The notes under the pieces: generated by a model
What the model saw: only the letters and a program-made list of their open reading frames with translations
Told to the model about the DNA's origin: nothing
Database searches by the model: none
Virus record (IMG/VR): IMGVR_UViG_3300027996_002186
Span: 186,001-250,000 of that record
DNA: 64,000 nucleotides
Strand: one strand, 5' to 3'
In this document: piece by piece, positions 12,742 through 48,631 of the stretch
Layout of the letters: each line of letters begins with the position of its first letter
Numbering within the stretch: the stretch's first letter is position 1
Made by a program: the position numbers and the translations under genes

Positions 12742-12771
12742 AAAAAACCCAACTTAATCAGTTGGGTTTTT
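12742..12771. terminator. bidirectional intrinsic terminator
   Basis: AAAAAACCCAAC-TTAATCA-GTTGGGTTTTT. Confidence 0.75.
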
Positions 12772-12957
12772 AATTTTAAATATATTTTCTATTTTAGATT
12801 TCCTTATTAAATTTATAGTTCTTATAAAATATCTAGACTTGATAGATAACCTTGGTGTAAAGTTAGAATTAGAAATAGATTGTACTGTTTCTATTGGTAT
12901 ATAAGGCACCCAAACTAAACCTGATTGTAGTGAATTACTTGTTTTCTTACCCGTCAT
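12754..12957 (-). CDS. small protein containing a C-terminal-region fragment of gp23-type major capsid protein
   Basis: GLVWVPYIPIETVQSISNSNFTPRLSIKSRY aligns ungapped with T4 gp23 GIYYAPYVALTPLRGSDPKNFQPVMGFKTRY (recalled sequence). Confidence 0.65.
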   Translation of the reverse strand: MTGKKTSNSLQSGLVWVPYIPIETVQSISNSNFTPRLSIKSRYFIRTINLIRKSKIENIFKIKNPTD

Positions 12958-12978
12958 ATAAATTATATGATGTTTTGA

Positions 12979-13296
12979 TTATTTGTTTTCAGTATATAAA
13001 TACTTCCTTCCTTCATCATTATAATCCATTAGATTATTTATAACTGTATCAACTTTGTCTAAGCTATCATCCAATTCCTTTTTAATTATCTGTAATGCCG
13101 ATATAGAATCATCTATTTGGTCATTTCCTTTCTTTGATTGGTTTTTATAGTTATTTAGTTCGTTTATATAAGATTCGATTTTTTTATTCTTATCTTCTAT
13201 TGTAGAAGTAAATCCTCTCAAATCCTCTATTATCTCACCAACCCTTGCTGTTGATATGTCTATCTCTTCGTTTTCAAAAACTTTCTTAATTTTCAT
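12979..13296 (-). CDS. coiled-coil protein with CTS-like leader
   Basis: 105 aa MKIKKVFENE; heptad pattern. Confidence 0.7.
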   Translation of the reverse strand: MKIKKVFENEEIDISTARVGEIIEDLRGFTSTIEDKNKKIESYINELNNYKNQSKKGNDQIDDSISALQIIKKELDDSLDKVDTVINNLMDYNDEGRKYLYTENK

Positions 13297-13316
13297 ATGA
13301 TTGTATTTTTAATATT

Positions 13317-13330
13317 TAATATATATATTA
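13317..13330. promoter_or_regulatory. palindromic back-to-back late boxes serving divergent genes
   Basis: TAATATATATATTA is a perfect palindrome containing TAATATATA on both strands. Confidence 0.65.
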
Positions 13331-13333
13331 ATT

Positions 13334-14023
13334 ATGAAGAAGAGGAATAAGCTTATTTTAGAGTTTACTGAATTTAATTTGCAAAGATTTGGTGCTGAGT
13401 CTGCTGGTGGTACTGGTGTGCCAATGACTGATAATCCACAATTATCTTTGGATGCTTTTGATAAACACCAAAGTGGTGTTAGACAAGCTATGTCTAGAAT
13501 TGATGATATTCTTCATAACTTAAAAGGAACTAGTGCTTATTCTACATTAAGATCTAAATTAGCTTTAGAAGACCAAGATATAAAAAATATTAAAATACAA
13601 AGAATAATTAAATCTAATTCTGTTCATTATGATGTTTATTTGTCAATAATCATTGATGATATAGAATATTGGGGTACGATTCTTAACATAACTGGATTAG
13701 ATCCTAAATTTGAATCAGAAGTATTCAAAGACTTTGATTTATATCAACCAAAAGAATGGACTATTAAGATAAAAGGTTTAGTTATTAAAACATTAAAAGC
13801 TTGGTTAAAGCCTGATCCAGGTATGTATAAACTTATAAATAATGAAGTTATATGTTATTCAGTTGATACTGGTAAACAATTAAGAATGGAAAAAGGTATT
13901 GAGATTGAATTAGTTAGATCTCATGATGATAAAATCATTGTAAGACATGATAATGAATCTTATAATCTAGTTGGTGATAACTTTATCTACTTTAACTATT
14001 GGTTTGATCCAGTTGAAGATTAA
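13334..14023 (+). CDS. hypothetical protein (CTS-like leader)
   Basis: 229 aa MKKRNKLILEFTEFN. Confidence 0.75.
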   Translation: MKKRNKLILEFTEFNLQRFGAESAGGTGVPMTDNPQLSLDAFDKHQSGVRQAMSRIDDILHNLKGTSAYSTLRSKLALEDQDIKNIKIQRIIKSNSVHYDVYLSIIIDDIEYWGTILNITGLDPKFESEVFKDFDLYQPKEWTIKIKGLVIKTLKAWLKPDPGMYKLINNEVICYSVDTGKQLRMEKGIEIELVRSHDDKIIVRHDNESYNLVGDNFIYFNYWFDPVED

Positions 14024-15589
14024 TCAACTAAGTTTATCCTCTATTGACTTTAATCTAATATCTAACTCTTTTATTGATTCAGAAACTAATGCATACCATT
14101 CAGTTGGAAATTCTAATGATTTAACTTTATCATCATTAACAATTTTTTTAATTTCCGGATCTTGAGACTTTCTTTCCGTCACCCAATTTGGAAAGTGTGT
14201 TTGTACATCATCAGCTAAAAACCCTACGTCCTTTTTACCACTTATTTTCCAATTGAATTCAACAGCTTGTAACTTTTTAAGTTTATCTAGTGAGTTTGAT
14301 ATAGACTTTATATTAGTTTTAAGTCTTTTGTCAGATGTTCCTAACCAACTTCCACCACCACCCCCTTTTGATGCTGACCCATCCTGGTAAAAACTAAAGG
14401 CTCCAGTGTAATTTGCACTTCCATTATTACCATCTACTCTGATAGTGGTAAAATCAGCAGAATGTCTATAAATATAGGTGTGTGCTGGTGCAACCGGTGT
14501 GATAATTAAAGGATCATTTGCCGGTACAGTACTTCGACCAAGAATATCAATACCACCTTGTGAATTAGTGGTGCTACCACCTGTTCCTGTATATAACCAC
14601 CAATCCGCCTTTACTGTTGTTGTGGATCTAATAGCACCACTTGTGAAAAGATTGCCGTAAACATTATATGTTGAAGTACCACCGGCGATGGCGAGATGTC
14701 TCCCTGAGACTGTTGATGGAGAGGTCCCAATTCCTATATTACCAACAAAATATGCGCTTCTATTATTAGAGGCTGCGGTAACAAAGAGAGGCCATGCACT
14801 GAATTCGTCCCCTTTTATATAGAGTCCGTAAGCACCAACAGCAGCACCCCCAAGGGCAAAACCAACACCGACTCCCTTCATAAAGTTTCCCTTACCTTCC
14901 ACTCTGAGATTTTGAGTGTTGGGTGTAAATACTAACCCAGCATTAGTTCTTACATCATCGTAACCATCGCTATCTGAATTTATAAAAAGTATCCGTCTGT
15001 CGGTACTGGTCGTTCCATCATCCGAGTGATATATATTATCCGAATTTATACTATCTCCAACCGATAGTGTGTTTTGATTTACCCAAATCGGATTTGATCC
15101 TCCTGCTTGTAATACCTGTCCCGAAGATCCATTAGGTAAGTAACTTAATGCTAATGTACCAGAAGTTATATTACTAGCATTTAGTTGAGTTATAAAAGTT
15201 CCTTCACCATAAAACCCACCAGATCCATCTGATTGTATATCACCATTAACGTGAAGTGTTTTTATGGGTGATATGCCTATACCAACATTACTACCAACGA
15301 TCTGAATAATACTATCATCTAATACATTACCACCTCCAATGAATTTTGGTATGAATCCTGGAGTACCGCTACCTGCAATACCACTAGATGCTTCAGTTTC
15401 AAATGTTGTTCCATTCCATACATATGGTACTCCACTAACTCCATCGTTTAAATCCCATACACGCATACCTGCGTATTTATAAGGTAAATCATCCTTGTCT
15501 GTATAAAATTGACTAGGCCCAACAACTAATCTGTTATCGATGGCGTCTGCCACATTTACTTGAAAATTATCTATTATTTGTATTGCCAT
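14024..15589 (-). CDS. tail fibre/spike with C-terminal peptidase S74 intramolecular chaperone
   Basis: NVGIG repeats, Gly/Ser/Thr-rich body, SDKRLKTNI...F-x-WK...GFLA, terminal coiled coil. Confidence 0.85.
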   Translation of the reverse strand: MAIQIIDNFQVNVADAIDNRLVVGPSQFYTDKDDLPYKYAGMRVWDLNDGVSGVPYVWNGTTFETEASSGIAGSGTPGFIPKFIGGGNVLDDSIIQIVGSNVGIGISPIKTLHVNGDIQSDGSGGFYGEGTFITQLNASNITSGTLALSYLPNGSSGQVLQAGGSNPIWVNQNTLSVGDSINSDNIYHSDDGTTSTDRRILFINSDSDGYDDVRTNAGLVFTPNTQNLRVEGKGNFMKGVGVGFALGGAAVGAYGLYIKGDEFSAWPLFVTAASNNRSAYFVGNIGIGTSPSTVSGRHLAIAGGTSTYNVYGNLFTSGAIRSTTTVKADWWLYTGTGGSTTNSQGGIDILGRSTVPANDPLIITPVAPAHTYIYRHSADFTTIRVDGNNGSANYTGAFSFYQDGSASKGGGGGSWLGTSDKRLKTNIKSISNSLDKLKKLQAVEFNWKISGKKDVGFLADDVQTHFPNWVTERKSQDPEIKKIVNDDKVKSLEFPTEWYALVSESIKELDIRLKSIEDKLS

Positions 15590-15607
15590 GTTCTATATAT
15601 AAATTTT

Positions 15608-17125
15608 TTAATATTTGAATTGGTAATTTACCGATGGTGGTCCAATTTGTGGAGCCCCATTCCATTGATAAACATAAAATTCTTTTGCTGCCCATAATCC
15701 TGTTGGTGATGATAAAACTATTGGTGTGTATGAGAATGATCCTGATGATGTATTCCCATACTCATCATATATATTTGATAATGTTCCATAATCAGAATCA
15801 TATATAAAATATAAATTACCAATCCCATTAATATCAATTATCTTATCACCCATTGATTCTGTTAATTTTGATAACCCAGCTAATCCAATACTATTCATTG
15901 TTAAATTTGTACTAAATCCATGAAAATATGGATAAATACCTGTAATCTGAGTACTTGCTGATGCTGTGTTTAATCCATCACCGACAGTAATTTTAAATTC
16001 TGTACTCACTGGTAGTATTGGTGATATAACAACACCACTTGAACTACCAGTTATTGTTTCATAAGAATTACTTACGATTGCTGGATAAGCCCCAGGTATC
16101 ATATTACTTAATCCGGTTATTGATGTATTTAATGTTTTCTTATTAATTGTATATTGTATTGAGGGTGATGGATAAGTACCAACTTCAGCATAACCAACTG
16201 AATAAACACCTGTTATTTCTATACTACAAGATGGTGGTAAATAATCATATATTATTCTTCTTAAACCCTCTGATAAAGGCATATTATTAAAAGTATCACC
16301 GTAGTTTATATCTCCTATTTCAACCGGACACATTCTGTCATCAGCAAATTCTAAAGAATAACCATTGAGACCCGCTGAAGTTACGTTTGTTGGTGTTCCA
16401 TAAATATCTAATTGTGATCCAGTATTTCCTATATAGTTTAAATCTGGTAATTTTATAAAATCCCAAATTAATTCACCATCCTCCATAATAAGAATCTTTT
16501 CATTAGAGGCTGATAAACCACTCTCATCGGATGTTGGGAATATTATATTATTTACTATAACACTTCCAGTATATCCACTACCAATCAAACTACCTTGTAT
16601 GTTTACATCACCAAATGATGGATTTATTATGTCTAATGACAGTGATTGTGTAGTTCCTGATACTATTTGACTTTGTATATAAGGAGCTTTTGTGTGTAGT
16701 GATAAATTTGTACCAGCTATTATAGCAACTCTTGTTGATGTTTGACTTTTTGTATCTATTTTTGTATTATAAAGAAATATATCAACATCACTTGTTAATA
16801 AAGTATCATTCATTATATTATCAAATTCATTATATGAATAAGTTCCAGAAAATGCTCTTTTACCTAAATAAATTTTTCTTTTAATATCTCTTTCACTTGG
16901 GTTGATAGCATCTAATCCAACATAAGATACCGTACCACCTGGAACCGTTGTTTGTTTAAATGGTACACTTGACCACAAAGACAAAATAGCATCTCTTATA
17001 TCCAAAGGGTTTACTAATTTATCCTCGTTATCCTCAAGCTTTAATAAGATATCATCCAAGTAATCTTGTACTGGATAACTTATCGCTTCAGTTGGTAAAC
17101 CTGTATTTACACTGAATGTCATCAT
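15608..17125 (-). CDS. putative virion structural protein (paralog of 17128-18762)
   Basis: 505 aa, beta-rich; shared blocks P.D.RDA..W, DIK..I..GKR.F, DIFLYNTK. Confidence 0.7.
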   Translation of the reverse strand: MMTFSVNTGLPTEAISYPVQDYLDDILLKLEDNEDKLVNPLDIRDAILSLWSSVPFKQTTVPGGTVSYVGLDAINPSERDIKRKIYLGKRAFSGTYSYNEFDNIMNDTLLTSDVDIFLYNTKIDTKSQTSTRVAIIAGTNLSLHTKAPYIQSQIVSGTTQSLSLDIINPSFGDVNIQGSLIGSGYTGSVIVNNIIFPTSDESGLSASNEKILIMEDGELIWDFIKLPDLNYIGNTGSQLDIYGTPTNVTSAGLNGYSLEFADDRMCPVEIGDINYGDTFNNMPLSEGLRRIIYDYLPPSCSIEITGVYSVGYAEVGTYPSPSIQYTINKKTLNTSITGLSNMIPGAYPAIVSNSYETITGSSSGVVISPILPVSTEFKITVGDGLNTASASTQITGIYPYFHGFSTNLTMNSIGLAGLSKLTESMGDKIIDINGIGNLYFIYDSDYGTLSNIYDEYGNTSSGSFSYTPIVLSSPTGLWAAKEFYVYQWNGAPQIGPPSVNYQFKY

Positions 17126-17127
17126 AA

Positions 17128-18762
17128 TTAAAATATAAATTCAAATTGTCCAACTCCAACATAACTTGATGTAGCTGTTGTTCTCCACACTTTAAATGGT
17201 CCTGTATAATCAGGATGTGTTATACTAGAACTTGTAAATATGGAATAGGTTGGTGATGTATAATTATATATTTCGAATCCACTTGGATCTTTGATATACT
17301 TTATATCTGTTGGGTATGTTCCTGGGTATATGAAATATACATATCCATTCCCACTATAAGGAACCTTATATGAGTGTGAAACTCCCATGTAAGGTTCTAT
17401 CAATTTTGGTGAACCTGTTGTTACTGTTTTTAATTCAGCTCCGTTTGTTGCTATTGTTGAATCATAATCGTAAAATATTGGATTTATGAAACTTATAGTT
17501 TCTGTTGAACTGAATGAATATCCTCCTGGGAAAGAACCTCTAAGTGTTGGTGGTGTTCCTGATATAGAATTATATGAAATTGATGGTACTTCTGCGTTTG
17601 AAACGTAAAGTGTAAATTCCATATCACCACTCACACTATATGTAGCATGATTAAATGTTGAATATGTTGAACTTCCGGGTATATCACTAAAAGTTGATCC
17701 ATATCCATCTCCGTTGAATGATGTTACTAATGTGTTAGATATATCTTCTCTAAATTGAAAATCCCTAACTAACTCATTATCATCTCTAGCATATGTTGTT
17801 ATTGACCAATCAAATTCTAAAGAAGGTGTTGTTCCAGCTTCAGCATATGTTGTTCCTGTTGTTGGGTTGATAATGCTTAGTTCTAAAACTGGTTCTATAT
17901 AAGGATAAAGTATTTGTCTTATAACTTCACTCATTGGCCAATCTTGACCAGCGAATGATCCAGTCAAAAATGTTGCTCCTTGTGTTATACCACCAATTGT
18001 TACTGGTACTACATTCTCATCAACAAACTCTAAAGAATATCCATTTAAAAGAACAGGACTTCCATAAATATTAGTTGGTAATCCAGGTGTTCCTATATCA
18101 GATATTGTAACAGTCGAATCATCCCATTTCAACGAACCATATGGGTAAGTACCAAAGTATCTTAAAATCTTACCATTTGAAGCATTAGTTGATGTTTCGG
18201 TTGCAGTTGGAAATACAATTCCATTAATTGCTACCCTTCCAACTGTTGAGAAAATATTAATATCACCACCGAATAAAGATGGGTTTGTTATATTTAGATC
18301 AAGTGCATCATCCGTTGGGTTTAATACTGATTCTAAATAAGGTGCGAATGTGTGTAGTGTTGAATTTGTTCCCGCTAATATCGCAACCTTTGTTGAACTT
18401 TGTGTTAGTGAATCTGATTTTGTGTTGTAAAGAAATATATCAGCATCTGAACTATTCATAAGAGAACTATTCATTATGTCTAAATTACCAAAACTTCTTT
18501 TACCTATTAATATTCTTTGTTTTATATCTCTATTTTCTGGATTACCAGAATCAATACCAATATATTCTTCTGTTGAGTAAGTTGCTCCCGTTGTAACTCT
18601 AAAAGATGAATTAGCCCAAGTTGTTAAGAAAGCATCTCTAACATCCCTAGGTGATATTAACTTTTGTGTATTATTAGGTAAATCTCCTAATACGGTAAAA
18701 ATGTCTGTTTTTCTTGTAGATTCAGTTACTTGACCTACGTTTATACTATAAGTAGAAGGCAT
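17128..18762 (-). CDS. putative virion structural protein (paralog of 15608-17125)
   Basis: 544 aa, Ser/Thr/Gly-rich; late box 18783-18791 (minus). Confidence 0.7.
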   Translation of the reverse strand: MPSTYSINVGQVTESTRKTDIFTVLGDLPNNTQKLISPRDVRDAFLTTWANSSFRVTTGATYSTEEYIGIDSGNPENRDIKQRILIGKRSFGNLDIMNSSLMNSSDADIFLYNTKSDSLTQSSTKVAILAGTNSTLHTFAPYLESVLNPTDDALDLNITNPSLFGGDINIFSTVGRVAINGIVFPTATETSTNASNGKILRYFGTYPYGSLKWDDSTVTISDIGTPGLPTNIYGSPVLLNGYSLEFVDENVVPVTIGGITQGATFLTGSFAGQDWPMSEVIRQILYPYIEPVLELSIINPTTGTTYAEAGTTPSLEFDWSITTYARDDNELVRDFQFREDISNTLVTSFNGDGYGSTFSDIPGSSTYSTFNHATYSVSGDMEFTLYVSNAEVPSISYNSISGTPPTLRGSFPGGYSFSSTETISFINPIFYDYDSTIATNGAELKTVTTGSPKLIEPYMGVSHSYKVPYSGNGYVYFIYPGTYPTDIKYIKDPSGFEIYNYTSPTYSIFTSSSITHPDYTGPFKVWRTTATSSYVGVGQFEFIF

Positions 18763-18810
18763 CGATATAATTACTTTTTATGTATATATTAAAAAGTGAT
18801 ACTAGGTAAT

Positions 18811-18839
18811 AAAAAATCCGATAATTACTTATCGGATTT
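18811..18839 (-). terminator. intrinsic terminator
   Basis: AAAAAATCCGATAA-TTAC-TTATCGGATTT; U-tract on minus strand. Confidence 0.7.
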
Positions 18840-18885
18840 AAATATAATTTTGATTCTATGTTTTTGGGTTGGATTTAGTAAAGAA

Positions 18886-19287: not shown

Positions 19288-19314
19288 AATTATTACTTTA
19301 TATTTTGTTTTATA

Positions 19315-20025: not shown

Positions 20026-20088
20026 AAATTATATATTAACCTACATGAACTTCCTAAAATAAATATATAAGAAAAATAACTATTAGAT

Positions 20089-25858: not shown

Positions 25859-26242
25859 ATGGCGATAACGAAAAACAAAATACAATTAATGGATAATACT
25901 TTATCTCTAGAGTTAGAGTTAGAGTTAGACTATTATTGTTATTATTGGAATTATTACTATGAAGATTATGATTATGATTGGGAAGATGAAAGAGAACCTT
26001 GTTGGCGATATTTAGAAACTCCTAACATTACTTATAATATAATAGAGACTAGAGGAAATGCTAAGTATTTTAGAAGAAATGTTATGGATATTGGTAAGAT
26101 GATAGATATGGATACTATATATACAAAGGAAAAAATGAGAGAAAGAAAGATAGATCAAATACTTGGATTACTTCCAGATTATGTTAATAACCCAACACTT
26201 GGTGATTTTTTCCACAAAAAAGAAATAAATTATGAAGATTGA
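25859..26242 (+). CDS. hypothetical protein, Tyr/Asp-rich tract and RERKIDQIL motif
   Basis: 127 aa; GAGTTA x3 microrepeat encodes LELELEL. Confidence 0.65.
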   Translation: MAITKNKIQLMDNTLSLELELELDYYCYYWNYYYEDYDYDWEDEREPCWRYLETPNITYNIIETRGNAKYFRRNVMDIGKMIDMDTIYTKEKMRERKIDQILGLLPDYVNNPTLGDFFHKKEINYED

Positions 26243-33988: not shown

Positions 33989-35830
33989 TTAGATATTTGG
34001 ATTATCCGCTCGATATTTATCATATCTGTTAGCAATTTCAATTAAGAACTTATTTCTAACAATATCATTATTATTAAACTCGAATAAATTCAATTTATCC
34101 ATACCCGTTACCATTCCGATAAAATCTAGATATCCAGAATCTTTCTTCCTAACATCATATTGTGATGTATCTCCCATCATAACAGCTTTTGACTCTCTGC
34201 CTAATCGAGTTACCCACAACATTAATTTTTTAACAGATGCGTTTTGACACTCATCTAATAACATTACACAGTTATCATACGTTGATCCTCTCATGTAAGC
34301 TAGTGGCTCAAATATAATTTCTTCTGATGCGAATAAAAAATCTGTTTGTTGTCTTCCTATTATCTTTACGAATGTGTTGTAGTATGATCTTTTATATGGG
34401 TCTAACTTTTCCTGCATATCACCTGGTAAGAATCCTAAATTTTCACCACTTTCTTGTACCGGTTTTGTTATTATTATTCTTTCTACTTTCTTATCTGCTA
34501 GTAAGGCTAATGCCGTATAACACGTTGTGAATGTGTTGTGTGTAACAATATAATTATTGGTTAAATATAAGTGTGTAGGATGATCTACTTTTATACATTG
34601 AGCTTCTTTAACACCAATAAGACTCGCTGATACTATATACCTACATGGTTTGTATTTAGTCTTAGGTATAACTCGGTCAAATTTTCTCCTTAATGAAAAA
34701 GGATTTATATCTGGATTCATTTTAATTGTTAAATTATATGATGTTCTTCCTTGTTTCACCACACCTTTGTGTGTGTAATTTTCATTTCTTGGTGTTTGAT
34801 CTGTGGATATACCACCCAATGATTGTACCAATTCCTTTACATCTTCTATTAATTCCTTTGAGGTTGAGCAAAAGCTAACGTATGTACCATCTTTTGATAC
34901 CGTACCATCTGTATCCATTAACCCTCTTAACATAGATATTCTATTATCAACACTGTTATACTTATAACAATCTGGTATAAATTTTTCATATGATAATTTA
35001 CCCCATATTCCAATTTTTTTAAGATATTGTTTTAATTTATTCTCCCTTGTTGTTTTTTCCTTAACTAAGGCAAAGTCATAACCTCCTCTATCAGATACAC
35101 TTATATCATCATCTAATAAGTTTGTTATTTTTTCGATAATTTCAGAATCCGCTGTGCTAAATCCAACATGGTGTCTCAAACAACCATCACCTATTAAACA
35201 ACCCAATATATATGGATCAATTTCCAATTCTCTTTCAGTAAAATTTACAGGTGATGTAATTGGTATTGTGTGGTTTATTCTACCACGATTTGTATAAAGA
35301 GTGTCTATTATTTCACTGGTTGTTTTTGTGGATCCACTTTTTGGTGATTTATACCTATTCCTAACACCATTTACTGTTTTTGTCCATTCCCTATTATTTC
35401 TATCAGATTCAGTTTGTGTATTCCATAAATGATCGGAACAGCATTCCACTTTTGATCCATCAGAAAATGTTAATTCCCATATTTCCTTTTCACCTTGTGG
35501 GAAAACACCGGTCACTATCGTTGAGTTGCCATCCACAGACATGACCCTATCACCAATTTCCAAATCACCCATTTTTACCCATCCATCGGGTGTTAGTATT
35601 GGTGAATCTAGTGGCTGTGCCTTTGATGTACCAGCTGGGCCGTGAACGGCTGTTAATATACTGTTTCTTATTCCTTTATATAATAAGTGTTGTTTTGGTG
35701 TTAATTCTACTCTAGACTTATTAAATTCAGCTTTTGTTAATGAATTCTTCTTTCTTGATATTTTCTGAAATTCATAATCTTTTATTCCGGTTTTTACTTC
35801 TTCATTTTGATCTTGTTTTCTTCTACTCAT
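33989..35830 (-). CDS. phoH: PhoH-family ATPase containing an intein
   Basis: GPAGTSK|T P-loop, LGFLPGD, LAYMRG, LDECQN, GDTSQ, DIVRN. Confidence 0.9.
   Translation of the reverse strand: MSRRKQDQNEEVKTGIKDYEFQKISRKKNSLTKAEFNKSRVELTPKQHLLYKGIRNSILTAVHGPAGTSKAQPLDSPILTPDGWVKMGDLEIGDRVMSVDGNSTIVTGVFPQGEKEIWELTFSDGSKVECCSDHLWNTQTESDRNNREWTKTVNGVRNRYKSPKSGSTKTTSEIIDTLYTNRGRINHTIPITSPVNFTERELEIDPYILGCLIGDGCLRHHVGFSTADSEIIEKITNLLDDDISVSDRGGYDFALVKEKTTRENKLKQYLKKIGIWGKLSYEKFIPDCYKYNSVDNRISMLRGLMDTDGTVSKDGTYVSFCSTSKELIEDVKELVQSLGGISTDQTPRNENYTHKGVVKQGRTSYNLTIKMNPDINPFSLRRKFDRVIPKTKYKPCRYIVSASLIGVKEAQCIKVDHPTHLYLTNNYIVTHNTFTTCYTALALLADKKVERIIITKPVQESGENLGFLPGDMQEKLDPYKRSYYNTFVKIIGRQQTDFLFASEEIIFEPLAYMRGSTYDNCVMLLDECQNASVKKLMLWVTRLGRESKAVMMGDTSQYDVRKKDSGYLDFIGMVTGMDKLNLFEFNNNDIVRNKFLIEIANRYDKYRADNPNI
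34535..35620 (-). mobile_element. class 3 intein (362 aa) with LAGLIDADG homing endonuclease, in the PhoH P-loop
   Basis: Starts AQPLD, block B DHLW, block F AQCIKV, ends VTHN/T; LGCLIGDG and LRGLMDTDG motifs. Confidence 0.88.
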
Positions 35831-41871: not shown

Positions 41872-41899
41872 TTTGATTTGATAAATTAATATATAGATT

Positions 41900-42274: not shown

Positions 42275-42277
42275 AAC

Positions 42278-42406: not shown

Positions 42407-42823
42407 ATAACTAACCAAATCCATATGTAAATGATAGTGGTTTATTATTAATAATAAATAAATCACTATTCTAAATATTAAAAATATCATTGATATTATC
42501 TTACCAATTATCGTGTATTGAATTTTACCGAAAATAACTTTAAGCATTATAGATGTTATTAACAGGAATAGGAATATAATCCAATTGTTTGTTAACAAAC
42601 CAAATAATACCCATAAAAGTTCGATACCAGATAATAAATTTCGATTTGTGTGTAGGTTTAAGTCTTTTTTACTTCTAAAATCATTTGATTTAGGAGATTC
42701 TCCTGACAATTCTTTGAATTTAATAAACCATTCTTTAACAAAAGAAATTTTCTTAAACTGTATAAGAGCCACCACACAAGATAATAAAATCAATATACCG
42801 AAACCATAAAAAATATAACCCAT
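42392..42823 (-). CDS. membrane protein
   Basis: 143 aa with 3-4 hydrophobic segments; late box 42844-42852 (minus). Confidence 0.7.
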   Translation of the reverse strand: MGYIFYGFGILILLSCVVALIQFKKISFVKEWFIKFKELSGESPKSNDFRSKKDLNLHTNRNLLSGIELLWVLFGLLTNNWIIFLFLLITSIMLKVIFGKIQYTIIGKIISMIFLIFRIVIYLLLIINHYHLHMDLVSYLIIT

Positions 42824-42922
42824 TGTCTAATTATTTTAATTTATATATATTATTACCCTTTTTGTTTTTATAGAAGCCGAGAATAAATATATATAGTATA
42901 ACTTAAAAAAAAATTAAAGTAA

Positions 42923-45619
42923 ATGGCATCTACTCCACTTTATAAGTCTCTTAAACCGAACGGAACATCATTTTATGCTTTTCCGGGAGCGGCCGAGGAC
43001 ATATCAGCAGCATATCAAAATACAAATTATAAAATGTATTTCAGTAAATATACTTTGGTAAATTTACCAAAGCAGAATGTTAATGCTGGTACACAATCAA
43101 AACCAATCTATTTTGACTTTGAGAATTCTTTTGAGGGTTCTGTAAACGCAACACCACCATCTAATTATTCTGATGCTATGATTGAATCTTTGAGAAACTA
43201 TGTTGCCAACCAAGAAGTTGTTATTAGAGAGAGTAGATTAAATAACACTAAATATTATTATGATACAAATGCCTTAGAAACAACTTCTGAGAAGTTATTC
43301 TTTAAGTGGGCAAAGAAATTAAATATTATTGACTTTGAACCTGCTATACCAGAGGATGAGTATTTTAGTAATTTACAAGAATTTCAATCGAGAAATATTA
43401 ACTTAGATGATTATTTTCCTGAATTTTTATGGAAAGAAAGAGAAGTAACTAATTGGAATACGAGAATTTTTGAACAAACTGGATCAACTGATCCATCTTT
43501 TTATGGTAAATTAGAAATTGAGTTTGGTGGGACTACTAATTTCAGAGTTGGTGATATTACTAATATATCTAATGTTAGTAATAATACGATATATAATGTC
43601 CCAGGACTTGTTGGTTCGAATTCAGTAGATGGTATAAATACGACAGTGCTTTCTATTGTTCCATCAAGTGCTACACAAGGTCAGCGAATTATATTCGATA
43701 TCGACACAGTTCTTGGTGCTACTCCTGAGTCATCGGGTAAAGCGAAATTAGTTTATAGTAGATTGGTTCAATATATTGGTGAGGTTAATGGTATTAGTAA
43801 TGTTCAAGAAGCCAATAGAAGTTATACAGAAGTTTATGCTAATATTCCTGATCATACGGGACAAACACCTGATGTTCTTTTTAGAACTCTGACTGATGTT
43901 AATTATAAACCAAATTTAACATTTCCGATTTTACCAAGTCAATATCAACCAGAAATACAAGGAGGTGAGATATTTAACTCTCCTATTGTTAGTACACCTC
44001 AAAATTATCCAGGTTCTTACTTTGGTCAGTTTGATACTTTAGATTTTACATATGAAACTGCTCCCGGTGATAGTATTAGAAGAAGCGGTAATTATTATGG
44101 TGTTAAAGGTGATGTAAATAATCCTGTTGTTAATGGTTCTACAATTGATGGTGTCACATTGGACTTTAATACAAGTCACTATGTTAAGATGAATATACCA
44201 AATAGAGTTGTTACAAACTTTGATCAGTTTAATGCCCTTGAGGTAAATAATAATCCACCTAAGAGTTTTGAGTATAATGCTATATTATGGTATTATACTG
44301 TTGAGGATTCTGATGGTAACTCTAAAAGTAATTTATATGGTATTTCATTTTTAGACCACCCAAATAATAATCTAAAAACAGAAGAAATAAGTTTAAGATT
44401 TCCAACTATTAAAAAGTTGGTTTCTGATGGTGAGCAAGATGGTACATCTTATTCTTATAACCTTAACCTTAACTTTAATATAATTAATGAAAATACGATT
44501 GATGCTTATAACCCAGAAGCTATAAATTCTTTATTTAGTATGAATTTATTTAATGATGCTATGAAAAGGTTAGCATCTACTAATGATAGTTTCATTAATA
44601 TTATAGCAGAACACTCTGTGATATCAGAAGAATTGAGAAATATAAAAGGTTTAGTATATACACAGACTGATTTAACTGTATTAAATACTAGAATGAATAA
44701 TCTTGAGAATTTAATAAGACTTTATTCAGCAAACCAAATGAGTACTAGTGAAAGTATTGAGGTTAATATATTACCTGGATCACCGCCACAGATTTTTTTG
44801 GATAGCATTGATCCATTATATAGTAGGGTTGATAATTACAAAGCGACTGACTTATATAATGCTCAAGGTATTATACCTATAAATATTTCTGTACCAAAGA
44901 ATAAAAGTTTTTTAATTAATTTCATTAATAATGATGAAGTAGAACTTGAATTAGATAATAATGACAAATTAACTTTTATTTTAGATAAAGATCTATATAT
45001 TAATCAATCGGTTGATATTTTAATTACACCGAGTGAATTTTCTTCTCAGAATAAGAAGATTGATATTTTTATGGAAAGTGATATAGGATCAAATGATGGT
45101 ACAACAACAGAGATTTTATTAATTGGTGATATTGATTTACCAGTTTTTTATAATACATCAACACAATTACCTAATTCGGCTTCTCTATGGAAAGATTTTA
45201 GATTTGATATTGATTTTGAACAACCTATTAATCTAATAACGGGTGCTAGACTTGAAGTTCCGTTTTCTGGTAATACTACAATAATTGAAAACTCTTTAAA
45301 AGTTGGTAGTACATTACAAATGAATAACTTCTATGTTGGTACATCTTCTATTTTTGATTTTTCAGGTCAGTATAAAATTGATTCTGTTGGTGGTGGTACT
45401 AGTTCTTATATAATCTTTGATATTAGTGATAATGATGATTTAGTTTCTTATGGATTATCATCATCATTGCCATTAGAGATACACGGAACATCATCAACAT
45501 CCTTATCAAACATACCTTATTTTTCTTTGAATAAAGGTGTTAAAATAAATGTTACCAGAGTTAGTAACTCAGCTATATTAAACGAAAGGTATATTTTACA
45601 ACTCGATGACATTATATAA
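42923..45619 (+). CDS. large putative virion structural protein
   Basis: 898 aa, beta-rich with central coiled coil; late-type box upstream. Confidence 0.7.
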   Translation: MASTPLYKSLKPNGTSFYAFPGAAEDISAAYQNTNYKMYFSKYTLVNLPKQNVNAGTQSKPIYFDFENSFEGSVNATPPSNYSDAMIESLRNYVANQEVVIRESRLNNTKYYYDTNALETTSEKLFFKWAKKLNIIDFEPAIPEDEYFSNLQEFQSRNINLDDYFPEFLWKEREVTNWNTRIFEQTGSTDPSFYGKLEIEFGGTTNFRVGDITNISNVSNNTIYNVPGLVGSNSVDGINTTVLSIVPSSATQGQRIIFDIDTVLGATPESSGKAKLVYSRLVQYIGEVNGISNVQEANRSYTEVYANIPDHTGQTPDVLFRTLTDVNYKPNLTFPILPSQYQPEIQGGEIFNSPIVSTPQNYPGSYFGQFDTLDFTYETAPGDSIRRSGNYYGVKGDVNNPVVNGSTIDGVTLDFNTSHYVKMNIPNRVVTNFDQFNALEVNNNPPKSFEYNAILWYYTVEDSDGNSKSNLYGISFLDHPNNNLKTEEISLRFPTIKKLVSDGEQDGTSYSYNLNLNFNIINENTIDAYNPEAINSLFSMNLFNDAMKRLASTNDSFINIIAEHSVISEELRNIKGLVYTQTDLTVLNTRMNNLENLIRLYSANQMSTSESIEVNILPGSPPQIFLDSIDPLYSRVDNYKATDLYNAQGIIPINISVPKNKSFLINFINNDEVELELDNNDKLTFILDKDLYINQSVDILITPSEFSSQNKKIDIFMESDIGSNDGTTTEILLIGDIDLPVFYNTSTQLPNSASLWKDFRFDIDFEQPINLITGARLEVPFSGNTTIIENSLKVGSTLQMNNFYVGTSSIFDFSGQYKIDSVGGGTSSYIIFDISDNDDLVSYGLSSSLPLEIHGTSSTSLSNIPYFSLNKGVKINVTRVSNSAILNERYILQLDDII

Positions 45620-45660
45620 CTTTCAAATTTTAATATATAATTAAAATAAAAAATTGTTAT

Positions 45661-46821
45661 ATGGGTGTTTGTGGACAATCATTATTTGGTAGTGGTAGTA
45701 ACTATATAAAAGTATCAAATGGATCATTCGTTGCTATTGAGGGATCAAATACAGCCGAGAATTTAATTCTATCTAATTTGAGAATGCCTTATAAGCAATT
45801 ATTAAAAGGTAGAGTTTTATTAAAAATTGGTCAAAAAGATTACTTATTAAACCATTTAGGTTTAGGAGATAACGCAACATTTTTAGCTATTAAAGTAACC
45901 TATGATCCTAAATCTGTAATTGAAGAAGATAATTATGTTGAGTGGTCTTTTTATGATGATGTTTCTAGAGTTAATTCAATGGCTCAGTTATTAGTATTAA
46001 CTGGTAATTCAAGTAATAGGATACCACAATTATTCTTAACAAATCCAAATAGTAAATACCCAGTAACACTTGATGTTATGGTTGCTGTTATTGATGATAA
46101 TTCATTCTTTGATTATAGCCCTGTTGTTTATTTTACACCATTAGTAACATTAGAAAATGCTGTTTATTTAGGACCTTATAATACATCACTTGGTACCAAC
46201 TTTGGTGCAACTATATCAAGTATTAATGATTTTATTGGATATGATATTGATAGTTTAAGAACTGAAATTGTAGACCATGTTGTTGAGTCAAATGGTTTGA
46301 TATTGAGTACCACTAGTAGTAATTATTTGTTGTATGATTATGATACTAATCCAATTAGTTCATTTACATTATCTGGTACATATTCTATGAAATTTGATAT
46401 AACAGATTCTTTAAATAACTCAATTAATGTTGCTGATAATGTTGTTATAGAATACAACACAATATACACACCTGTTGTTTATTTCACACCCGATGTTTAC
46501 TTACCTGGATCAACAGCTTCACCATTTAATACTTTACAAGGTGCTACATTTGGGGCTACAGTTTCATTAACTATGTCTAGTTATGGTGGTACGGTTAGTT
46601 CATTGGATATGGCTGGTGTTTTAGTTGACCATGTTGAAGAAGCTAATGGTGTTACTTTCTCAGCTACGGGTAGTAACTACATATTATATGATTATTCAAG
46701 TTTGGTTATAAGTGGTATAACATCATCAGGAACATATTCATTAGGATTTAATATAACAGATTCTTTTGGAACACTTGATCCAAATAACATCGTAAATATA
46801 TCATTCACAGGATTATTATGA
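45661..46821 (+). CDS. putative structural protein with two tandem ~120-aa Ig-like repeats
   Basis: PVVYFTP...FGAT...VDHV.E.NG...NY.LYDY...SGTYS..F.ITDS occurs twice; late box 45631-45639. Confidence 0.7.
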   Translation: MGVCGQSLFGSGSNYIKVSNGSFVAIEGSNTAENLILSNLRMPYKQLLKGRVLLKIGQKDYLLNHLGLGDNATFLAIKVTYDPKSVIEEDNYVEWSFYDDVSRVNSMAQLLVLTGNSSNRIPQLFLTNPNSKYPVTLDVMVAVIDDNSFFDYSPVVYFTPLVTLENAVYLGPYNTSLGTNFGATISSINDFIGYDIDSLRTEIVDHVVESNGLILSTTSSNYLLYDYDTNPISSFTLSGTYSMKFDITDSLNNSINVADNVVIEYNTIYTPVVYFTPDVYLPGSTASPFNTLQGATFGATVSLTMSSYGGTVSSLDMAGVLVDHVEEANGVTFSATGSNYILYDYSSLVISGITSSGTYSLGFNITDSFGTLDPNNIVNISFTGLL

Positions 46822-47810
46822 TAATTAAAAAGTACATACAATTTATAAAAGAAAGCTCAGAGGATTTTAAATCACTAGGTGAGTGGATTGAATCTATATC
46901 TGATGATGAGTATGTTATGAACATCGTAAATAGATATTTAGGTGATATTGGTTCAGATATAGAATTATCAAATGCTATTAATTTATTAGATGAGGTAGAA
47001 CAATCTGATATAAAATCACAAGTACAAGATTATTTACAAAATGGTCTTGTTGAGATAGAACCACAAGTTTTAACATCTACTGATATTGAAGATTTGAGTG
47101 AGAGTTTGGAATTAATGCCTGCTCCGGTTATACAACAAGAAATAAGTGTTGCTGGTAAAGGTGTATTTTCATCTTTCCTTAAATCATTAACTGCTCTCGG
47201 TAGAAAAGAATCTAGTCCTGATTATGAGAATTGTCCAAAAGATTTCTTGATTTATTACAATTATGAAAATTTAAATACTAATGATGTTAAAATAATATTT
47301 AGTCGATTCAAATCACTTTTAAGGTATTCTGATAAGATTGATTATAGTAAGAATGAAATAAATCTTTACTTCGGTATCAAATGTGATGGTCAATTTGAAT
47401 ATGGTATATCTTATGATAATTTACTTCCAATTGGTCAATTTAAGTTATCAATCTCAAGTATTAAGTGGTTAGTTCAACAACAATCAAAATCAGCACAATC
47501 CATTAAAAAGGAATTAGTTAATCTAACATACAATGATATATTATTACTTGGTAAGATTAAAATGGATATGGTAGATTTTAACCCTGGTTATCATGAAAAG
47601 AGATCTTATCCTACTATAAATGATAGAGTTATATCTTTTGGGTATTATGGTGTCGGTAAATGGGATAATGGTAAATTAGATGAAGGTGAGTATATGAATA
47701 TTAAAAATAATTTTACTACTTGGGTAATTTCTAAGAAATGGGGTGGTAAAGTGTTGGTGAGTGTTAAACCACAATCATTTTGGTTATACATACATATAAA
47801 ATTGAAATAA
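46818..47810 (+). CDS. hypothetical protein with CTS-like leader
   Basis: 330 aa MIIKKYIQFIKES. Confidence 0.75.
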   Translation: MIIKKYIQFIKESSEDFKSLGEWIESISDDEYVMNIVNRYLGDIGSDIELSNAINLLDEVEQSDIKSQVQDYLQNGLVEIEPQVLTSTDIEDLSESLELMPAPVIQQEISVAGKGVFSSFLKSLTALGRKESSPDYENCPKDFLIYYNYENLNTNDVKIIFSRFKSLLRYSDKIDYSKNEINLYFGIKCDGQFEYGISYDNLLPIGQFKLSISSIKWLVQQQSKSAQSIKKELVNLTYNDILLLGKIKMDMVDFNPGYHEKRSYPTINDRVISFGYYGVGKWDNGKLDEGEYMNIKNNFTTWVISKKWGGKVLVSVKPQSFWLYIHIKLK

Positions 47811-47813
47811 GAT

Positions 47814-48107
47814 ATGAAATATTTAAGAAAATATAACGAGTCAAACGAACAAGAGCAAGATTTAGATTTTGTTTTAGCTAAGATAAAAGAAGAGTTTACT
47901 ATTGATAAGGTTAAAGAATCTTATGAAAAAGAAATGCTTGAATGGGCAGATGATTACACTACAAGTGGTAATGGTGAGGCACAAGACATTATATTAGAAC
48001 AGATGATTGGGTGGTTCGAATCAAACCATTCTGAGCTTACAGATGAAGTATCTAAAGAAGTTTATAATAAATTACAAGAAGAATACGAATTCCTAAACAT
48101 TGGTTAA
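47814..48107 (+). CDS. acidic hypothetical protein with CTS-like leader
   Basis: 97 aa MKYLRKYNES. Confidence 0.75.
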   Translation: MKYLRKYNESNEQEQDLDFVLAKIKEEFTIDKVKESYEKEMLEWADDYTTSGNGEAQDIILEQMIGWFESNHSELTDEVSKEVYNKLQEEYEFLNIG

Positions 48108-48120
48108 TAATTTTCTATAA
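48094..48120 (+). promoter_or_regulatory. TAAAC-N17-TATAA promoter
   Basis: TAAAC 48094-98, TATAA 48116-20. Confidence 0.6.
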
Positions 48121-48139
48121 TAAGAAAATATTAATTTAA

Positions 48140-48631
48140 ATGACTCAAAGCTCTAAAGAAGAATTACTTCAAAAATGGGCACCTATTATCGATTCAATGG
48201 GTGTTACTGGTTCAAAAGCAGATTGGATGTCACAATATGTTGAAATGCACTCTATTAATGAGAATCAAATATCATCAACTCAATCCAATTTTAATTTAAC
48301 ACTATTACCTATAGCTAAAAGAGTTTTTGCTAAAACGGTTAGTTTAGATTTGGTAGATGTTAATCCTATTGGTGGTGGAAACTCATCTAATGAGATGAAA
48401 GAAATAAGATCTGATATTAAAATTGAAAATCGTGATAGAAAAATAGATTCTATTACAGAAGATAAATGTTTTGATGAAATGAAAGTCGAAGACCACCCTA
48501 AATATAAAGAACAACAAATGCCTAAGAGTAATTTATTTTATTTGGATTATCAATATGGTGGTGGTACATCTAGTAACACACATAAAAAGACTAGAAGAAG
48601 TAAAAAGAAAAAGAAAAATGAAAAAGTTTAA
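48140..48631 (+). CDS. truncated N-terminal paralog of gp23-type major capsid protein with an insertion
   Basis: MTQSSKEELLQKWAPIID resembles T4 gp23 MTIKTKAELLNKWKPLLE; LLPIAKRVFAKTVSLDLVDVNPI...LFYLDYQYG resembles the gp23 VRR...DICGVQPM...VFALRAVYG region. Confidence 0.7.
   Translation: MTQSSKEELLQKWAPIIDSMGVTGSKADWMSQYVEMHSINENQISSTQSNFNLTLLPIAKRVFAKTVSLDLVDVNPIGGGNSSNEMKEIRSDIKIENRDRKIDSITEDKCFDEMKVEDHPKYKEQQMPKSNLFYLDYQYGGGTSSNTHKKTRRSKKKKKNEKV

What the first reader, a model, noticed from the sequence alone, without database searches (positions are those of the whole stretch)
12754..48631. Two dispersed fragments of the major capsid protein, each tagged with the same short motif and driven by the same promoter class
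Seen: 48140-48631 matches the gp23 N-terminus (KEELLQKWAPII; LLPIAKRV..T...DLV.V.P...LFYLDYQYG), then ends at 163 aa in a basic tail. A ~45-aa insert carrying RDRKIDSI interrupts the gp23-like part. 12754-12957 matches a 31-aa C-terminal gp23 block (G...PY...NF.P....K.RY) followed by RKSKIENIF. Both sit behind (T/A)AAAC-N17-TATAA promoters rather than the late box. Established: the retained N-terminal region corresponds to the T4 Gol peptide that triggers Lit, and capsid proteins trigger several anti-phage sensors. Inference: these are maintained capsid-epitope mini-proteins, such as decoys for capsid-sensing defences, assembly regulators, or inhibitors of co-infecting relatives, rather than decay products.
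Basis: partly seen in the sequence, partly recalled or inferred. Interest (0 to 1): 0.78.

Follow-up and report, generated by a model that had tools for sequence, protein, structure and literature searches.

The report
Conserved mini-genes made from capsid-protein ends
A giant marine phage carries, besides its normal capsid gene, two small conserved genes built from the front and the back end of that capsid protein, each joined to a short helix; they are real, selected genes of unknown function, not debris.

Summary
Both ORFs exist as described. ORF 48140-48631 (+, 163 aa) matches residues 8-112 of this genome's own 576-aa major capsid protein (MCP), E=5e-16. ORF 12754-12957 (minus strand, 67 aa) matches MCP residues 512-555, E=2e-9, and passes Pfam's Gp23 cut-off. 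The full MCP lies about 94 kb upstream on the same contig, so the fragments are extra copies, not a split gene.

Neither is decay. Both stay intact and syntenic in two complete relatives. dN/dS is 0.26 and 0.38 (bootstrap upper bounds 0.44 and 0.70). Each founds a family of short proteins: 454 clusters (at 50% identity) for the N piece, at least 46 (at 90%) for the C piece.

The N piece's "insert" is its most conserved part. AlphaFold is confident only about one amphipathic helix in each protein, and that helix carries the motif.

The "same tag" claim holds only loosely. The C-type tag is a real movable module that recurs in neighbouring mini-ORFs. It is not statistically the same as the N piece's motif.

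The TAAACA-N17-TATAAT element is enriched, intergenic and conserved. It differs from the motif upstream of the MCP and scaffold genes.

Function is inferred only: MCP mimics, acting either as antagonists of capsid sensing or as head-assembly accessories. I found no published description.

The parts
48094..48121 (+). Promoter-like element TAAACA-N16-TATAAT, ending 19 nt upstream of the N-piece start codon
   Evidence: Best sigma-70-like match in the region, 10 of 12. The pattern is enriched in the window. AAACA and TTTCTATAAT are invariant in the window, LR745206 and LR756502.
48140..48631 (+). N piece: 163-aa ORF derived from the MCP N-terminus
   Evidence: Family of 282 clusters at 90% identity and 454 representatives at 50%. 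dN/dS 0.26, CI 0.15-0.44.
48140..48274 (+). aa 1-45: MCP propeptide-like segment (KEELLQKWAPII..ADWMSQYVEMHSINEN)
   Evidence: Aligned to MCP residues 8-45 and to T4 gp23 residues 1-45. Absent from many family members, which match only profile positions ~49-145.
48302..48367 (+). aa 55-76, LLPIAKRVFAKTVSLDLVDVNP: equivalent of the most conserved N-terminal MCP segment
   Evidence: Aligned to own-clade MCP residues 88-109 and to T4 gp23 residues 95-116 in A7. That this interval is the T4 Gol region rests on my recollection of its numbering.
48386..48460 (+). aa 83-107: the only confidently predicted element, an amphipathic helix; it contains RDRKIDSI (48431-48454)
   Evidence: AlphaFold2 pLDDT 80-88 here against 62.5 overall. 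E96, N97, R98, D99, R100 and I102 are invariant in 41 family members.
48533..48559 (+). aa 132-140, LFYLDYQYG: MCP-like strand after the insert
   Evidence: Aligns with LLYIDFRYD of the clade MCPs and QVFALRAVYG of T4 gp23. F133, Y134, D136 and Y139 are invariant.
48581..48628 (+). aa 148-163: basic tail (HKKTRRSKKKKKNEKV)
   Evidence: Present in one sub-family only; the 148-aa sub-family ends ..GGTESNTIL.
48618..48839 (+). 73-aa ORF overlapping the N piece's end, with RKRSIAKIF
   Evidence: Orthologues follow the N piece in L001 and L010. The L010 orthologue (SRRMKISKIFKDE) is hit by the C-type tag HMM at 10.9 bits against a shuffle maximum of 9.3. The window copy itself did not score.
48902..49231 (+). 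T5orf172/MUG113 (GIY-YIG-like) gene, conserved neighbour
   Evidence: Pfam E=1.6e-17. Same position in L001, L002 and L010.
12962..12989 (-). Promoter-like element AAAACA-N16-TATAAT, ending 5 nt upstream of the C-piece start codon
   Evidence: In LR745206 the same element precedes an extra 50-aa mini-ORF that lies before the C piece.
12754..12957 (-). C piece: 67-aa ORF derived from the MCP C-terminus
   Evidence: Pfam Gp23 E=3.5e-8. Own MCP 512-555, E=2e-9. Family of at least 46 clusters of 49-96 aa. dN/dS 0.38, CI 0.19-0.70.
12829..12921 (-). aa 13-43: MCP-like block GLVWVPYI...LSIKSRY
   Evidence: Corresponds to T4 gp23 ~446-478 through the clade MCP.
12778..12825 (-). aa 45-60: predicted helix carrying the tag; RKSKIENIF = 12778-12804
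   Evidence: AlphaFold2 helix 45-60, pLDDT about 83. R52, K55, I56 and I59 are nearly invariant in 28 members. dN/dS of the tail is 0.20.
12743..12771 (.). Bidirectional intrinsic-terminator hairpin overlapping the C piece's last codons and stop codon
   Evidence: Stem of 12 pairs followed by a T run on both strands.

Best explanation
Both ORFs are functional accessory genes that arose by partial duplication of the phage's own T4-type MCP gene. They have been kept as 'capsid-mimic' mini-proteins.

Each consists of MCP-derived segments that are not confidently structured when modelled alone:
- N piece: the propeptide-like start, the most conserved N-terminal MCP segment, and the next strand.
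- C piece: the last two or three strands.
Each is joined to one amphipathic, partly basic helix.

Proposed mechanism (inferred): the MCP-derived peptide binds, by mimicry or strand addition, a partner that normally recognises unassembled MCP. The helix gives a second contact or lets the mini-proteins associate. The genes carry a sigma-70-like promoter unlike that of the MCP and scaffold genes, and they lie outside the head module. I therefore favour, narrowly, a role away from the capsid: a competitive antagonist (trigger mimic) of a host factor or sensor that recognises the conserved MCP epitope, for example EF-Tu-linked capsid sensing.

Shown: homology, conservation, selection, architecture, a separate full MCP.
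Inferred: expression timing, binding by mimicry, the partner.
For: Homology to the own MCP.

Full MCP on the same contig. L018 is 100% identical to window 46140-50628 and lies on IMGVR_UViG_3300027996_002186. The MCP is at 137,993-139,720 of that contig.

Genes, not debris. ORFs are intact and syntenic in LR745206, LR756502 and metagenome contigs. dN/dS is 0.26 and 0.38, like neighbouring genes, and 0-0.2% of bootstraps reach 1. The families number 454 and 46 clusters, and the top 150 hits of the N profile are all 56-366 aa.

The retained N segment aligns with T4 gp23 95-116. [quoted passage not shown] Avs7 senses MCP together with EF-Tu (PMC13581612).

Only the helices are confidently folded, as expected for peptide-like ligands.

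Promoter class. TAAACA-N17-TATAAT is enriched and intergenic, and is shared with an SbcC-like gene at 50112. It is conserved in three genomes. The MCP and scaffold genes instead carry TCCACCTT-N22/23-GGGT..ATATATA, which is absent from the window.

Neighbourhoods are non-structural.

The family is absent from related megaphages that have the same MCP type: LR756500, LR756501, LR756503 and LR756504. So it is not a universal head gene.
Against: - No expression or binding data exist. Metatranscriptome contigs cover only scraps of the locus, and DNA carry-over cannot be excluded.
- In T4 the Gol peptide alone activates Lit, so an unmodified mimic would trigger rather than block such a sensor.
- The C piece's region is not a known sensor epitope.
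- The host and its defences are unknown.
- Stable synteny over deep divergence resembles a lineage core gene more than a typical patchy anti-defence gene.
- In contig L008 a scaffold-repeat fragment carries a similar motif. That points at head assembly as the common theme.
- Promoter function and timing rest on pattern matches only.
Confidence: 0.33

Rival explanations
1. Head-assembly accessory proteins of a giant capsid. The MCP-like strands insert into the MCP lattice or bind the scaffold or prohead core, for example at lattice discontinuities or during nucleation. The helices let the N piece, the C piece and other tagged mini-proteins co-assemble.
For: - Every identified source of the fragments is a head-morphogenesis protein: MCP N-terminus, MCP C-terminus and, in contig L008, scaffold repeats (E=6e-17) ending in IENREKIIDELL.
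- The N and C families co-occur about 35-38 kb apart in all three complete genomes that have either one.
- The N piece keeps the propeptide-like start. In T4 that part faces the core (my recollection).
- Synteny is stable, and the invariant residues suggest a conserved phage-encoded partner.
- The C-type tag recurs in adjacent mini-ORFs.
Against: - The genes lie 94 kb and about 130 kb from the MCP gene. They carry a different promoter-like element.
- The family is absent from related megaphages with the same MCP and scaffold type.
- Many family members lack the propeptide part.
- No similarity to T4 gp67, gp68 or gp22, or to the clade scaffold.
Confidence: 0.3
2. Weapons against co-infecting relatives: dominant-negative capsid fragments, made early, that poison the assembly of a competitor's similar MCP.
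For: The promoter class is early- or middle-like. The mimicry is of the most conserved MCP segment. From my own knowledge, Gag-derived restriction factors of mammals are an analogue.
Against: The fragments are only about 32% identical to the own MCP, while MCPs across the clade share 50-80%. They are therefore poor mimics of any close relative. Self-poisoning would also have to be avoided. No evidence bears on this directly.
Confidence: 0.1
3. Passenger debris of a mobile element: MCP gene pieces carried along with the neighbouring T5orf172/GIY-YIG-like gene or left by recombination, without a function of their own.
For: A T5orf172 gene lies 270 nt downstream of the N piece. The C-piece family shows indels in its MCP-like part among close relatives.
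Against: dN/dS is well below 1 with bootstrap support. The reading frames stay intact over saturated synonymous divergence. There are hundreds of diverged family members with invariant residues. The C piece has no endonuclease neighbour. The gene order is fixed in relatives.
Confidence: 0.03
4. Pieces of a split capsid gene that are joined by splicing, trans-splicing or recoding to give the real MCP.
For: Inteins are present in this window in PhoH-like and DnaJ-like genes.
Against: An uninterrupted 576-aa MCP exists in the same genome. The two pieces cover only MCP ~8-125 and ~512-555, lie on opposite strands 35 kb apart, and no middle part is in the window. The pieces are only 32% identical to the MCP.
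Confidence: 0.01

Closest known systems
T4-type major capsid protein (Gp23 family, PF07068; HK97 fold)
   Same: Clear sequence homology of both pieces to the termini of this clade's MCP and, for the C piece, to the Pfam Gp23 model.
   Different: Only about 105 and 45 residues of a 576-aa protein are retained. There is no spine helix and no A domain, and no confident fold is predicted. Each piece has an added helix that the MCP lacks. The genes are separate and sit behind a different promoter-like element.
T4 Gol peptide (the gp23 segment that binds EF-Tu and activates the Lit protease)
   Same: The N piece's conserved core aligns with T4 gp23 95-116. The Gol region is a 29-residue stretch in the first quarter of gp23 and its most conserved part (PMC3014915).
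   Different: Gol is an experimentally defined part of the full MCP, not a separate gene. Here a stand-alone gene carries the equivalent segment followed by a conserved 48-aa insert. Binding to EF-Tu is untested. Placing Gol at gp23 93-122 rests on my recollection.
Small prohead core proteins of T4 (gp67, gp68, internal proteins)
   Same: Small, partly helical, charged proteins that could enter a prohead. gp68 also has a basic C-terminal tail.
   Different: No detectable similarity. Not encoded in the head gene cluster. The T4 proteins are not derived from the MCP.
Trigger or substrate mimics used by phages against defence (e.g. the DNA mimic Ocr; from my own knowledge)
   Same: The concept: a phage product imitating the molecule that a host system recognises, and binding it without consequence.
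   Different: Known mimics imitate DNA or soak up signalling molecules. I found no described mimic of a capsid protein. No functional data exist here.
Capsid-derived dominant-negative restriction factors of animals (Fv1, enJS56A1; from my own knowledge)
   Same: Truncated or diverged capsid genes kept under selection, acting through capsid-capsid contacts.
   Different: Those are host genes of retroviral origin acting against incoming viruses. These are genes of the virus itself.

Membership tests
Gp23 / T4-type MCP (PF07068) | Significant sequence match to the family | tested here: met
   C piece: 33.7 bits against a cut-off of 24.4. N piece: no Pfam hit, but hhalign probability 99.5% to the clade MCP and PHROG 138 at E=0.0017.
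Gp23 / T4-type MCP (PF07068) | Complete HK97-type fold able to form capsomers (N-arm, E-loop, P domain with spine helix, A domain) | tested here: not met
   The pieces cover MCP 8-~125 and 512-555 only. AlphaFold2 gives one helix and otherwise low confidence. They are derivatives of the family, not capsid proteins.
Pseudogene / decay fragment | Relaxed selection (dN/dS near 1), broken frames, patchy retention | tested here: not met
   dN/dS 0.26 (CI 0.15-0.44) and 0.38 (CI 0.19-0.70). Intact and syntenic orthologues. Large families.
T4 Gol-like Lit/EF-Tu activating peptide | Homology to the Gol segment of gp23 | tested here: inconclusive
   A7 aligns N-piece aa 55-76 with T4 gp23 95-116 through the clade MCPs. 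A direct profile search against T4 gp23 is not significant (E=1.6). The Gol residue numbers are from memory.
T4 Gol-like Lit/EF-Tu activating peptide | Binds EF-Tu domains II/III and activates a Lit-type protease | not testable with these tools
   Needs biochemistry or multimer modelling.
Split gene joined by intein, trans-splicing or recoding | The pieces together cover the whole protein, and no intact copy exists | tested here: not met
   Intact 576-aa MCP on the same contig. The middle ~385 residues have no counterpart in the window.
Homing-endonuclease passenger fragment | Adjacent endonuclease gene plus recent, DNA-level copy of its target gene | tested here: not met
   A T5orf172 gene is adjacent to the N piece only. 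The fragments are about 32% identical in protein to the MCP, and the gene order is fixed across diverged relatives.
Scaffold / prohead core proteins | Similarity to scaffold or core proteins, and location in the head module | tested here: not met
   hhalign against the clade scaffold gives probability 0.1%. T4 gp67, gp68 and gp22 score within shuffles. The loci are 94 kb or more from the MCP gene.
Common 'tag' shared by both pieces | The two motifs are statistically the same module | tested here: inconclusive
   The best profile-profile alignment lies on the motifs but gives E=0.033, probability 1.5%. Cross-HMM scores of 1-3 bits fall within shuffles. A post-hoc pattern R..KI[DE].I[LFI] occurs 3 times against 0.02 expected in window proteins. 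The C-type tag on its own is a real module: it is internal in P0313 and P0314 and recurs in the L003 50-aa ORF at 19.9 bits.

The most novel reading that the evidence does not exclude
Megaphages of this clade keep a toolkit of mini-proteins cut from their own head proteins (MCP N-terminus, MCP C-terminus and, in some relatives, scaffold repeats). Each is fitted with a short amphipathic helix and transcribed apart from the head genes. Under this reading they work as molecular mimics of unassembled head proteins. They would blunt host sensors that recognise the conserved capsid epitope (with EF-Tu), or control nucleation of a very large capsid. Either would be a class of phage protein not described so far.
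Probability: 0.3. Interest if true: 0.85.

Novelty: new variant of a known kind. Interest (0 to 1): 0.62.

Why it matters
Capsid proteins are now known to be major triggers of bacterial immunity (Lit/Gol, CapRel, Avs7). No phage countermeasure that imitates the capsid protein has been described.

Very large capsids also need accessory proteins whose origin is mostly unknown.

Two abundant, conserved families of capsid-derived mini-proteins in uncultured megaphages bear on both questions. They are small enough to express and test directly.

Annotation pipelines should also take note. Short ORFs with Gp23 hits in these genomes are genes of their own, not broken capsid genes.

Tried and rejected
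1. Tail-sheath origin of the 65-aa ORF after the N piece in LR756502 (L002:4495-4692). This was a resemblance from memory. Pfam, PHROG and tblastn gave nothing.
2. Tag derived from scaffold repeats or from T4 gp67. hhalign gave probability 0.1%. The HMM score for gp67 was -2.6, within shuffles. Only a BLAST alignment in L008 runs from the scaffold repeats into the motif.
3. A Rosetta-stone link between the 73-aa downstream ORF and the N piece through the fused ORF in L008. The match is only 12 aa, E=0.05.
4. Fold search on the models was not run, because pLDDT of 62-66 would give meaningless matches.
5. ESM Atlas feature search: no hit above 0.69, no lead.
6. NCBIfam: nothing for either piece.
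7. Head-type promoter motif in the window: absent.
8. Finding the own MCP with the LR745206 MCP or an MCP alignment as query failed, because only the best 80 loci are kept. A closer marine MCP as query found it.
9. Expression from public metatranscriptomes. Only short, low-depth contigs at 90-99% identity were found, one of which starts upstream of the putative promoter. The result is inconclusive.
10. Literature: four searches found no description of capsid-derived mini-genes in phages.


Full report
WHAT THE WINDOW IS

The window is an AT-rich stretch of an uncultured marine megaphage. Its closest deposited relatives are LR745206 (634,780 bp, about 80% nucleotide identity over the N-piece region) and LR756502 (642,428 bp). 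LR756501/LR756503 (735 kb), LR756504 and LR756500 are more distant. I recall these records as the 'huge phages' of Al-Shayeb et al. 2020 (PMC7162821). I did not check the accessions in that paper.

A 4,489-bp stretch of window 46140-50628 is 100% identical to parts of two IMG/VR contigs. One is IMGVR_UViG_3300027996_002186, 483,262 bp.

THE OBSERVATION

N piece. ORF 48140-48631 (+) encodes 163 aa.
- Against the MCP on the same IMG/VR contig (L155:1001-2728, 576 aa), BLASTP gives E=5e-16 and 32% identity over MCP 8-112.
- A profile of 41 family members matches the LR745206 MCP with hhalign probability 99.5%, E=5e-23.
- A multiple alignment with T4 gp23 and three clade MCPs (A7) places N-piece aa 55-76 (LLPIAKRV..DLVDVNP) on T4 gp23 95-116.
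- In the same alignment a 48-aa insert falls between T4 ~119 and 120. LFYLDYQYG then aligns with the next MCP strand.

C piece. ORF 12754-12957 lies on the minus strand and encodes 67 aa.
- It passes Pfam's Gp23 threshold: 33.7 bits against 24.4, E=3.5e-8.
- It matches the own MCP 512-555 at E=2e-9.
- Longer orthologues continue the MCP homology to the MCP's last strand. The tag begins roughly where the MCP ends.

Local tblastn of the MCP and scaffold against the window finds these two places and nothing else of note.

THEY ARE EXTRA COPIES, NOT A SPLIT GENE

The contig that is identical to the window carries an uninterrupted MCP at 137,993-139,720. That is about 94 kb upstream of the N piece at 234,140. 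LR745206 and LR756502 likewise have a full MCP (200,686-202,428 and 227,395-229,161) in addition to both pieces. In LR745206 the MCP gene follows a large protease-scaffold gene, as it does in LR756501 and LR756504.

THEY ARE GENES, NOT DEBRIS

Both ORFs are intact in LR745206 (157 and 75 aa) and LR756502 (165 and 61 aa), with conserved neighbours.

The N-piece block is repeated in a contig whose N piece is only 63% identical. Its order is: 320-330 aa gene, 97 aa gene, N piece, 73-76 aa gene, T5orf172, three small genes, SbcC-like gene, S21, DnaJ.

The C piece keeps its position across several diverged contigs, although other genes have been inserted upstream (GH16; PrkA plus DUF444). It sits at the end of a small operon that starts with a 105-aa gene. 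That operon lies beside three large tail-fibre-like genes and converges on a DUF5856 gene.

Nei-Gojobori dN/dS values:

| Region | dN/dS | Bootstrap 95% CI |
|---|---|---|
| N piece | 0.26 | 0.15-0.44 |
| C piece, whole | 0.38 | 0.19-0.70 |
| C piece, tag only | 0.20 | not computed |
| Neighbouring genes | 0.09-0.44 | not computed |

Family sizes:
- A word-indexed search finds 282 clusters (at 90% identity) of N-piece relatives, mostly 148 aa.
- An exhaustive profile search finds 454 representatives at 50% identity with E<=1e-3, of which 216 reach 1e-10. The top 150 are all 56-366 aa. The few of 236-326 aa that I read are true MCPs, apparently cut short.
- A profile of C pieces finds at least 46 clusters of 49-96 aa.

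WHAT THE FAMILIES LOOK LIKE

The N family's best-conserved part is not the gp23-like start. It is the 'insert' plus the following strand..ENRDRKI(D/E)SI..KEF.EMKVEDHPDY..P.G.LFYLDF.YG.

Many members consist only of profile positions ~49-145. That is the conserved MCP segment, the helix and the strand. A few carry only the last module on an unrelated N-terminus (P0274, P0265).

AlphaFold2 with the family alignment gives:
- N piece: mean pLDDT 62.5, with one confident element, a helix at aa 83-107 that contains RDRKIDSI.
- C piece: mean pLDDT 66, with one confident helix at aa 45-60, which is the tag.

So both proteins are MCP-derived segments without a confidently predicted structure in a monomer model, plus one amphipathic helix.

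THE 'SAME TAG' CLAIM

The C-type tag, N.IRK.KIE(N/K)IF.., is the most conserved part of its family. In two members (P0313, P0314) it sits internally, between the two MCP-like strands, instead of at the C-terminus. It therefore behaves as a movable module.

An HMM of this tag finds two further targets. The maximum over 30 shuffles was 9.3 bits.
- The 50-aa mini-ORF just upstream of the C piece in LR745206, at 19.9 bits.
- The 76-aa gene just downstream of the N piece in L010/L011, at 10.9 bits.

A similar ending occurs in the 51-aa mini-ORF before the C piece in L015.

The same HMM gives the N piece's motif only 1.6 bits, and the reverse search also fails. hhalign's best local alignment of the two families lies exactly on RDRKIDSITEDK/RKSKIENIFKIK, but at E=0.033 and probability 1.5%.

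A pattern written after the fact, R..KI[DE].I[LFI], occurs 3 times in window proteins against 0.02 expected. The other two sites are in small genes at 25859-26242 and 49540-49752.

I conclude that a tag module is real for the C piece and its neighbours. The N piece has a conserved helix of similar character. Their identity as one motif is suggestive only.

A 1.1-kb metagenome contig (L008) adds a hint. It has three tandem mini-ORFs:
- a 45-aa ORF ending ..NDREKIIDELL..;
- a 79-aa fragment of the scaffold repeats (E=6e-17) ending IENREKIIDELLDE;
- a 243-aa ORF that starts with an MCP-C-like VYIDPYL, then NRDRIIEDIL, then a clear N-family core (hhalign 98.4%).

PROMOTERS AND TERMINATOR

WAAAC-N17-TATAA occurs 8 times against 2.5 expected. 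By my mapping onto the ORF list, six sites end 3-52 nt upstream of the start codons at 12957, 25303, 25859, 48140, 49271 and 50112. The last of these is the SbcC-like gene. A seventh site lies in the window's last intergenic stretch.

Upstream of the N piece, AAACA and TTTCTATAAT are invariant in three genomes although the flanks have diverged.

The MCP gene of this genome, and the MCP and scaffold genes of LR745206, carry a different shared element: TCCACCTT-N22/23-GGGT..ATATATA. It does not occur in the window.

Early or middle timing is an inference.

The C piece ends in a 12-bp-stem bidirectional terminator.

EXPRESSION

Marine metatranscriptome assemblies hold short contigs at 90-99% identity over parts of 47.0-50.0 kb. 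These include 47850-48192, 48066-48275 and 48376-48459. Depth is low and DNA carry-over is not excluded. One contig starts upstream of the putative promoter. The result is inconclusive.

DISTRIBUTION

Among 50,697 deposited phage records, only LR745206 and LR756502 hold N-family genes, even with a distant core-only member as query. The related megaphages LR756500, LR756501, LR756503 and LR756504 have the same MCP type and, where I looked (LR756501, LR756504), the same protease-scaffold. They show only their MCP. The families are therefore lineage-specific, not universal head genes.

HOW IT MOST LIKELY WORKS

Shown: two selected, separately encoded derivatives of the MCP termini. Each is a segment without a confidently predicted fold plus a helix.

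Inferred: they act by mimicry of unassembled MCP. Two readings are nearly equally likely.

(a) Antagonist of a host factor or sensor that recognises the conserved MCP epitope.
- For: the promoter class, the non-structural neighbourhoods, the peptide-like models, and the retained conserved segment. In T4 that segment binds EF-Tu and is what Lit reads (PMC3014915). Avs7 also senses MCP together with EF-Tu (PMC13581612).
- Against: Gol alone activates Lit; the C piece's region is not a known sensor epitope; and the host is unknown.

(b) Accessory of head assembly.
- For: all source proteins are head proteins. The two families co-occur. Synteny is stable. The residues are invariant, as if facing a conserved phage partner. 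The tag is shared among adjacent mini-ORFs.
- Against: the location, the promoter class, and the absence from related megaphages.

I rate (a) 0.33 and (b) 0.30. Interference with co-infecting relatives gets 0.10, passenger debris 0.03 and a split gene 0.01. The rest is unassigned.

COMPARISON WITH WHAT IS KNOWN

The pieces are derivatives of the Gp23 family but fail its defining feature, a complete HK97 fold. They resemble the T4 Gol peptide in which segment is kept, but they are stand-alone genes with an added conserved insert. They show no similarity to T4 gp67, gp68 or gp22. Four literature searches found no description of capsid-derived mini-genes in phages.

VERDICT

The function is open. 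I rate it a new variant of a known kind: paralogous derivatives of a structural protein. It is of moderate to high interest because the families are large, conserved and directly testable.

Noticed in passing
window 52548-54323 (+): DnaJ-domain protein of 591 aa that contains an intein with a LAGLIDADG homing endonuclease (Pfam DnaJ, Intein_splicing, Hom_end). The orthologue in relative L010 is 236 aa without the intein.
   Followed up: partly
window 33989-35830 (-): PhoH-like ATPase (E=2e-47) with a LAGLIDADG/Hom_end insertion, so probably a second intein-bearing gene.
   Followed up: no
window 51927-52118 (+): Phage-encoded ribosomal protein S21 (Pfam E=2.9e-12). Also present in relative L010.
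   Followed up: partly
window 1177-3060 (-): 627-aa protein with several nuclease/zinc-finger-type domains of unknown function (DUF723, DUF4379, DUF2726, DUF559). It may be a composite homing-endonuclease-like gene next to the RecA-like gene at 3195-4421.
   Followed up: no
window 14024-18762 (-): Three large genes just upstream of the C-piece operon. One has an endosialidase-chaperone (Peptidase_S74) domain and one has Ig-like hits, so this looks like a tail-fibre module. The arrangement is conserved in L015 and L016.
   Followed up: partly
L155:930-975; L007:1790-1830 and 3995-4045: Shared element TCCACCTT-N22/23-GGGT..ATATATA upstream of the MCP and protease-scaffold genes. It is a candidate head-gene (late) promoter of this clade and is absent from the window.
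   Followed up: partly
L003:3871-4023 with 4001-4228; L015:9868-10023 with 10001-10216: A 50-51-aa tag-bearing mini-ORF overlaps the start of the C piece by exactly 23 nt in two diverged genomes. The window lacks this mini-ORF but keeps its promoter-like element. Whether the overlap means coupling or recoding is open.
   Followed up: no
L008 (1,117-bp metagenome contig): Three tandem mini-ORFs, each with an NR(D/E)..I(D/E)..L motif. One of them is a fragment of the scaffold repeats.
   Followed up: partly
window 25859-26242 (+) and 49540-49752 (+): Two further small genes with R(E/D).KI(D/E)QIL near the C-terminus. The first sits behind the same promoter-like element.
   Followed up: no
LR756501.1 (735 kb): tblastn with its own MCP reports 5 places in the record, so there may be further MCP paralogues or fragments of another kind. 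I could not locate them with the calls available.
   Followed up: no
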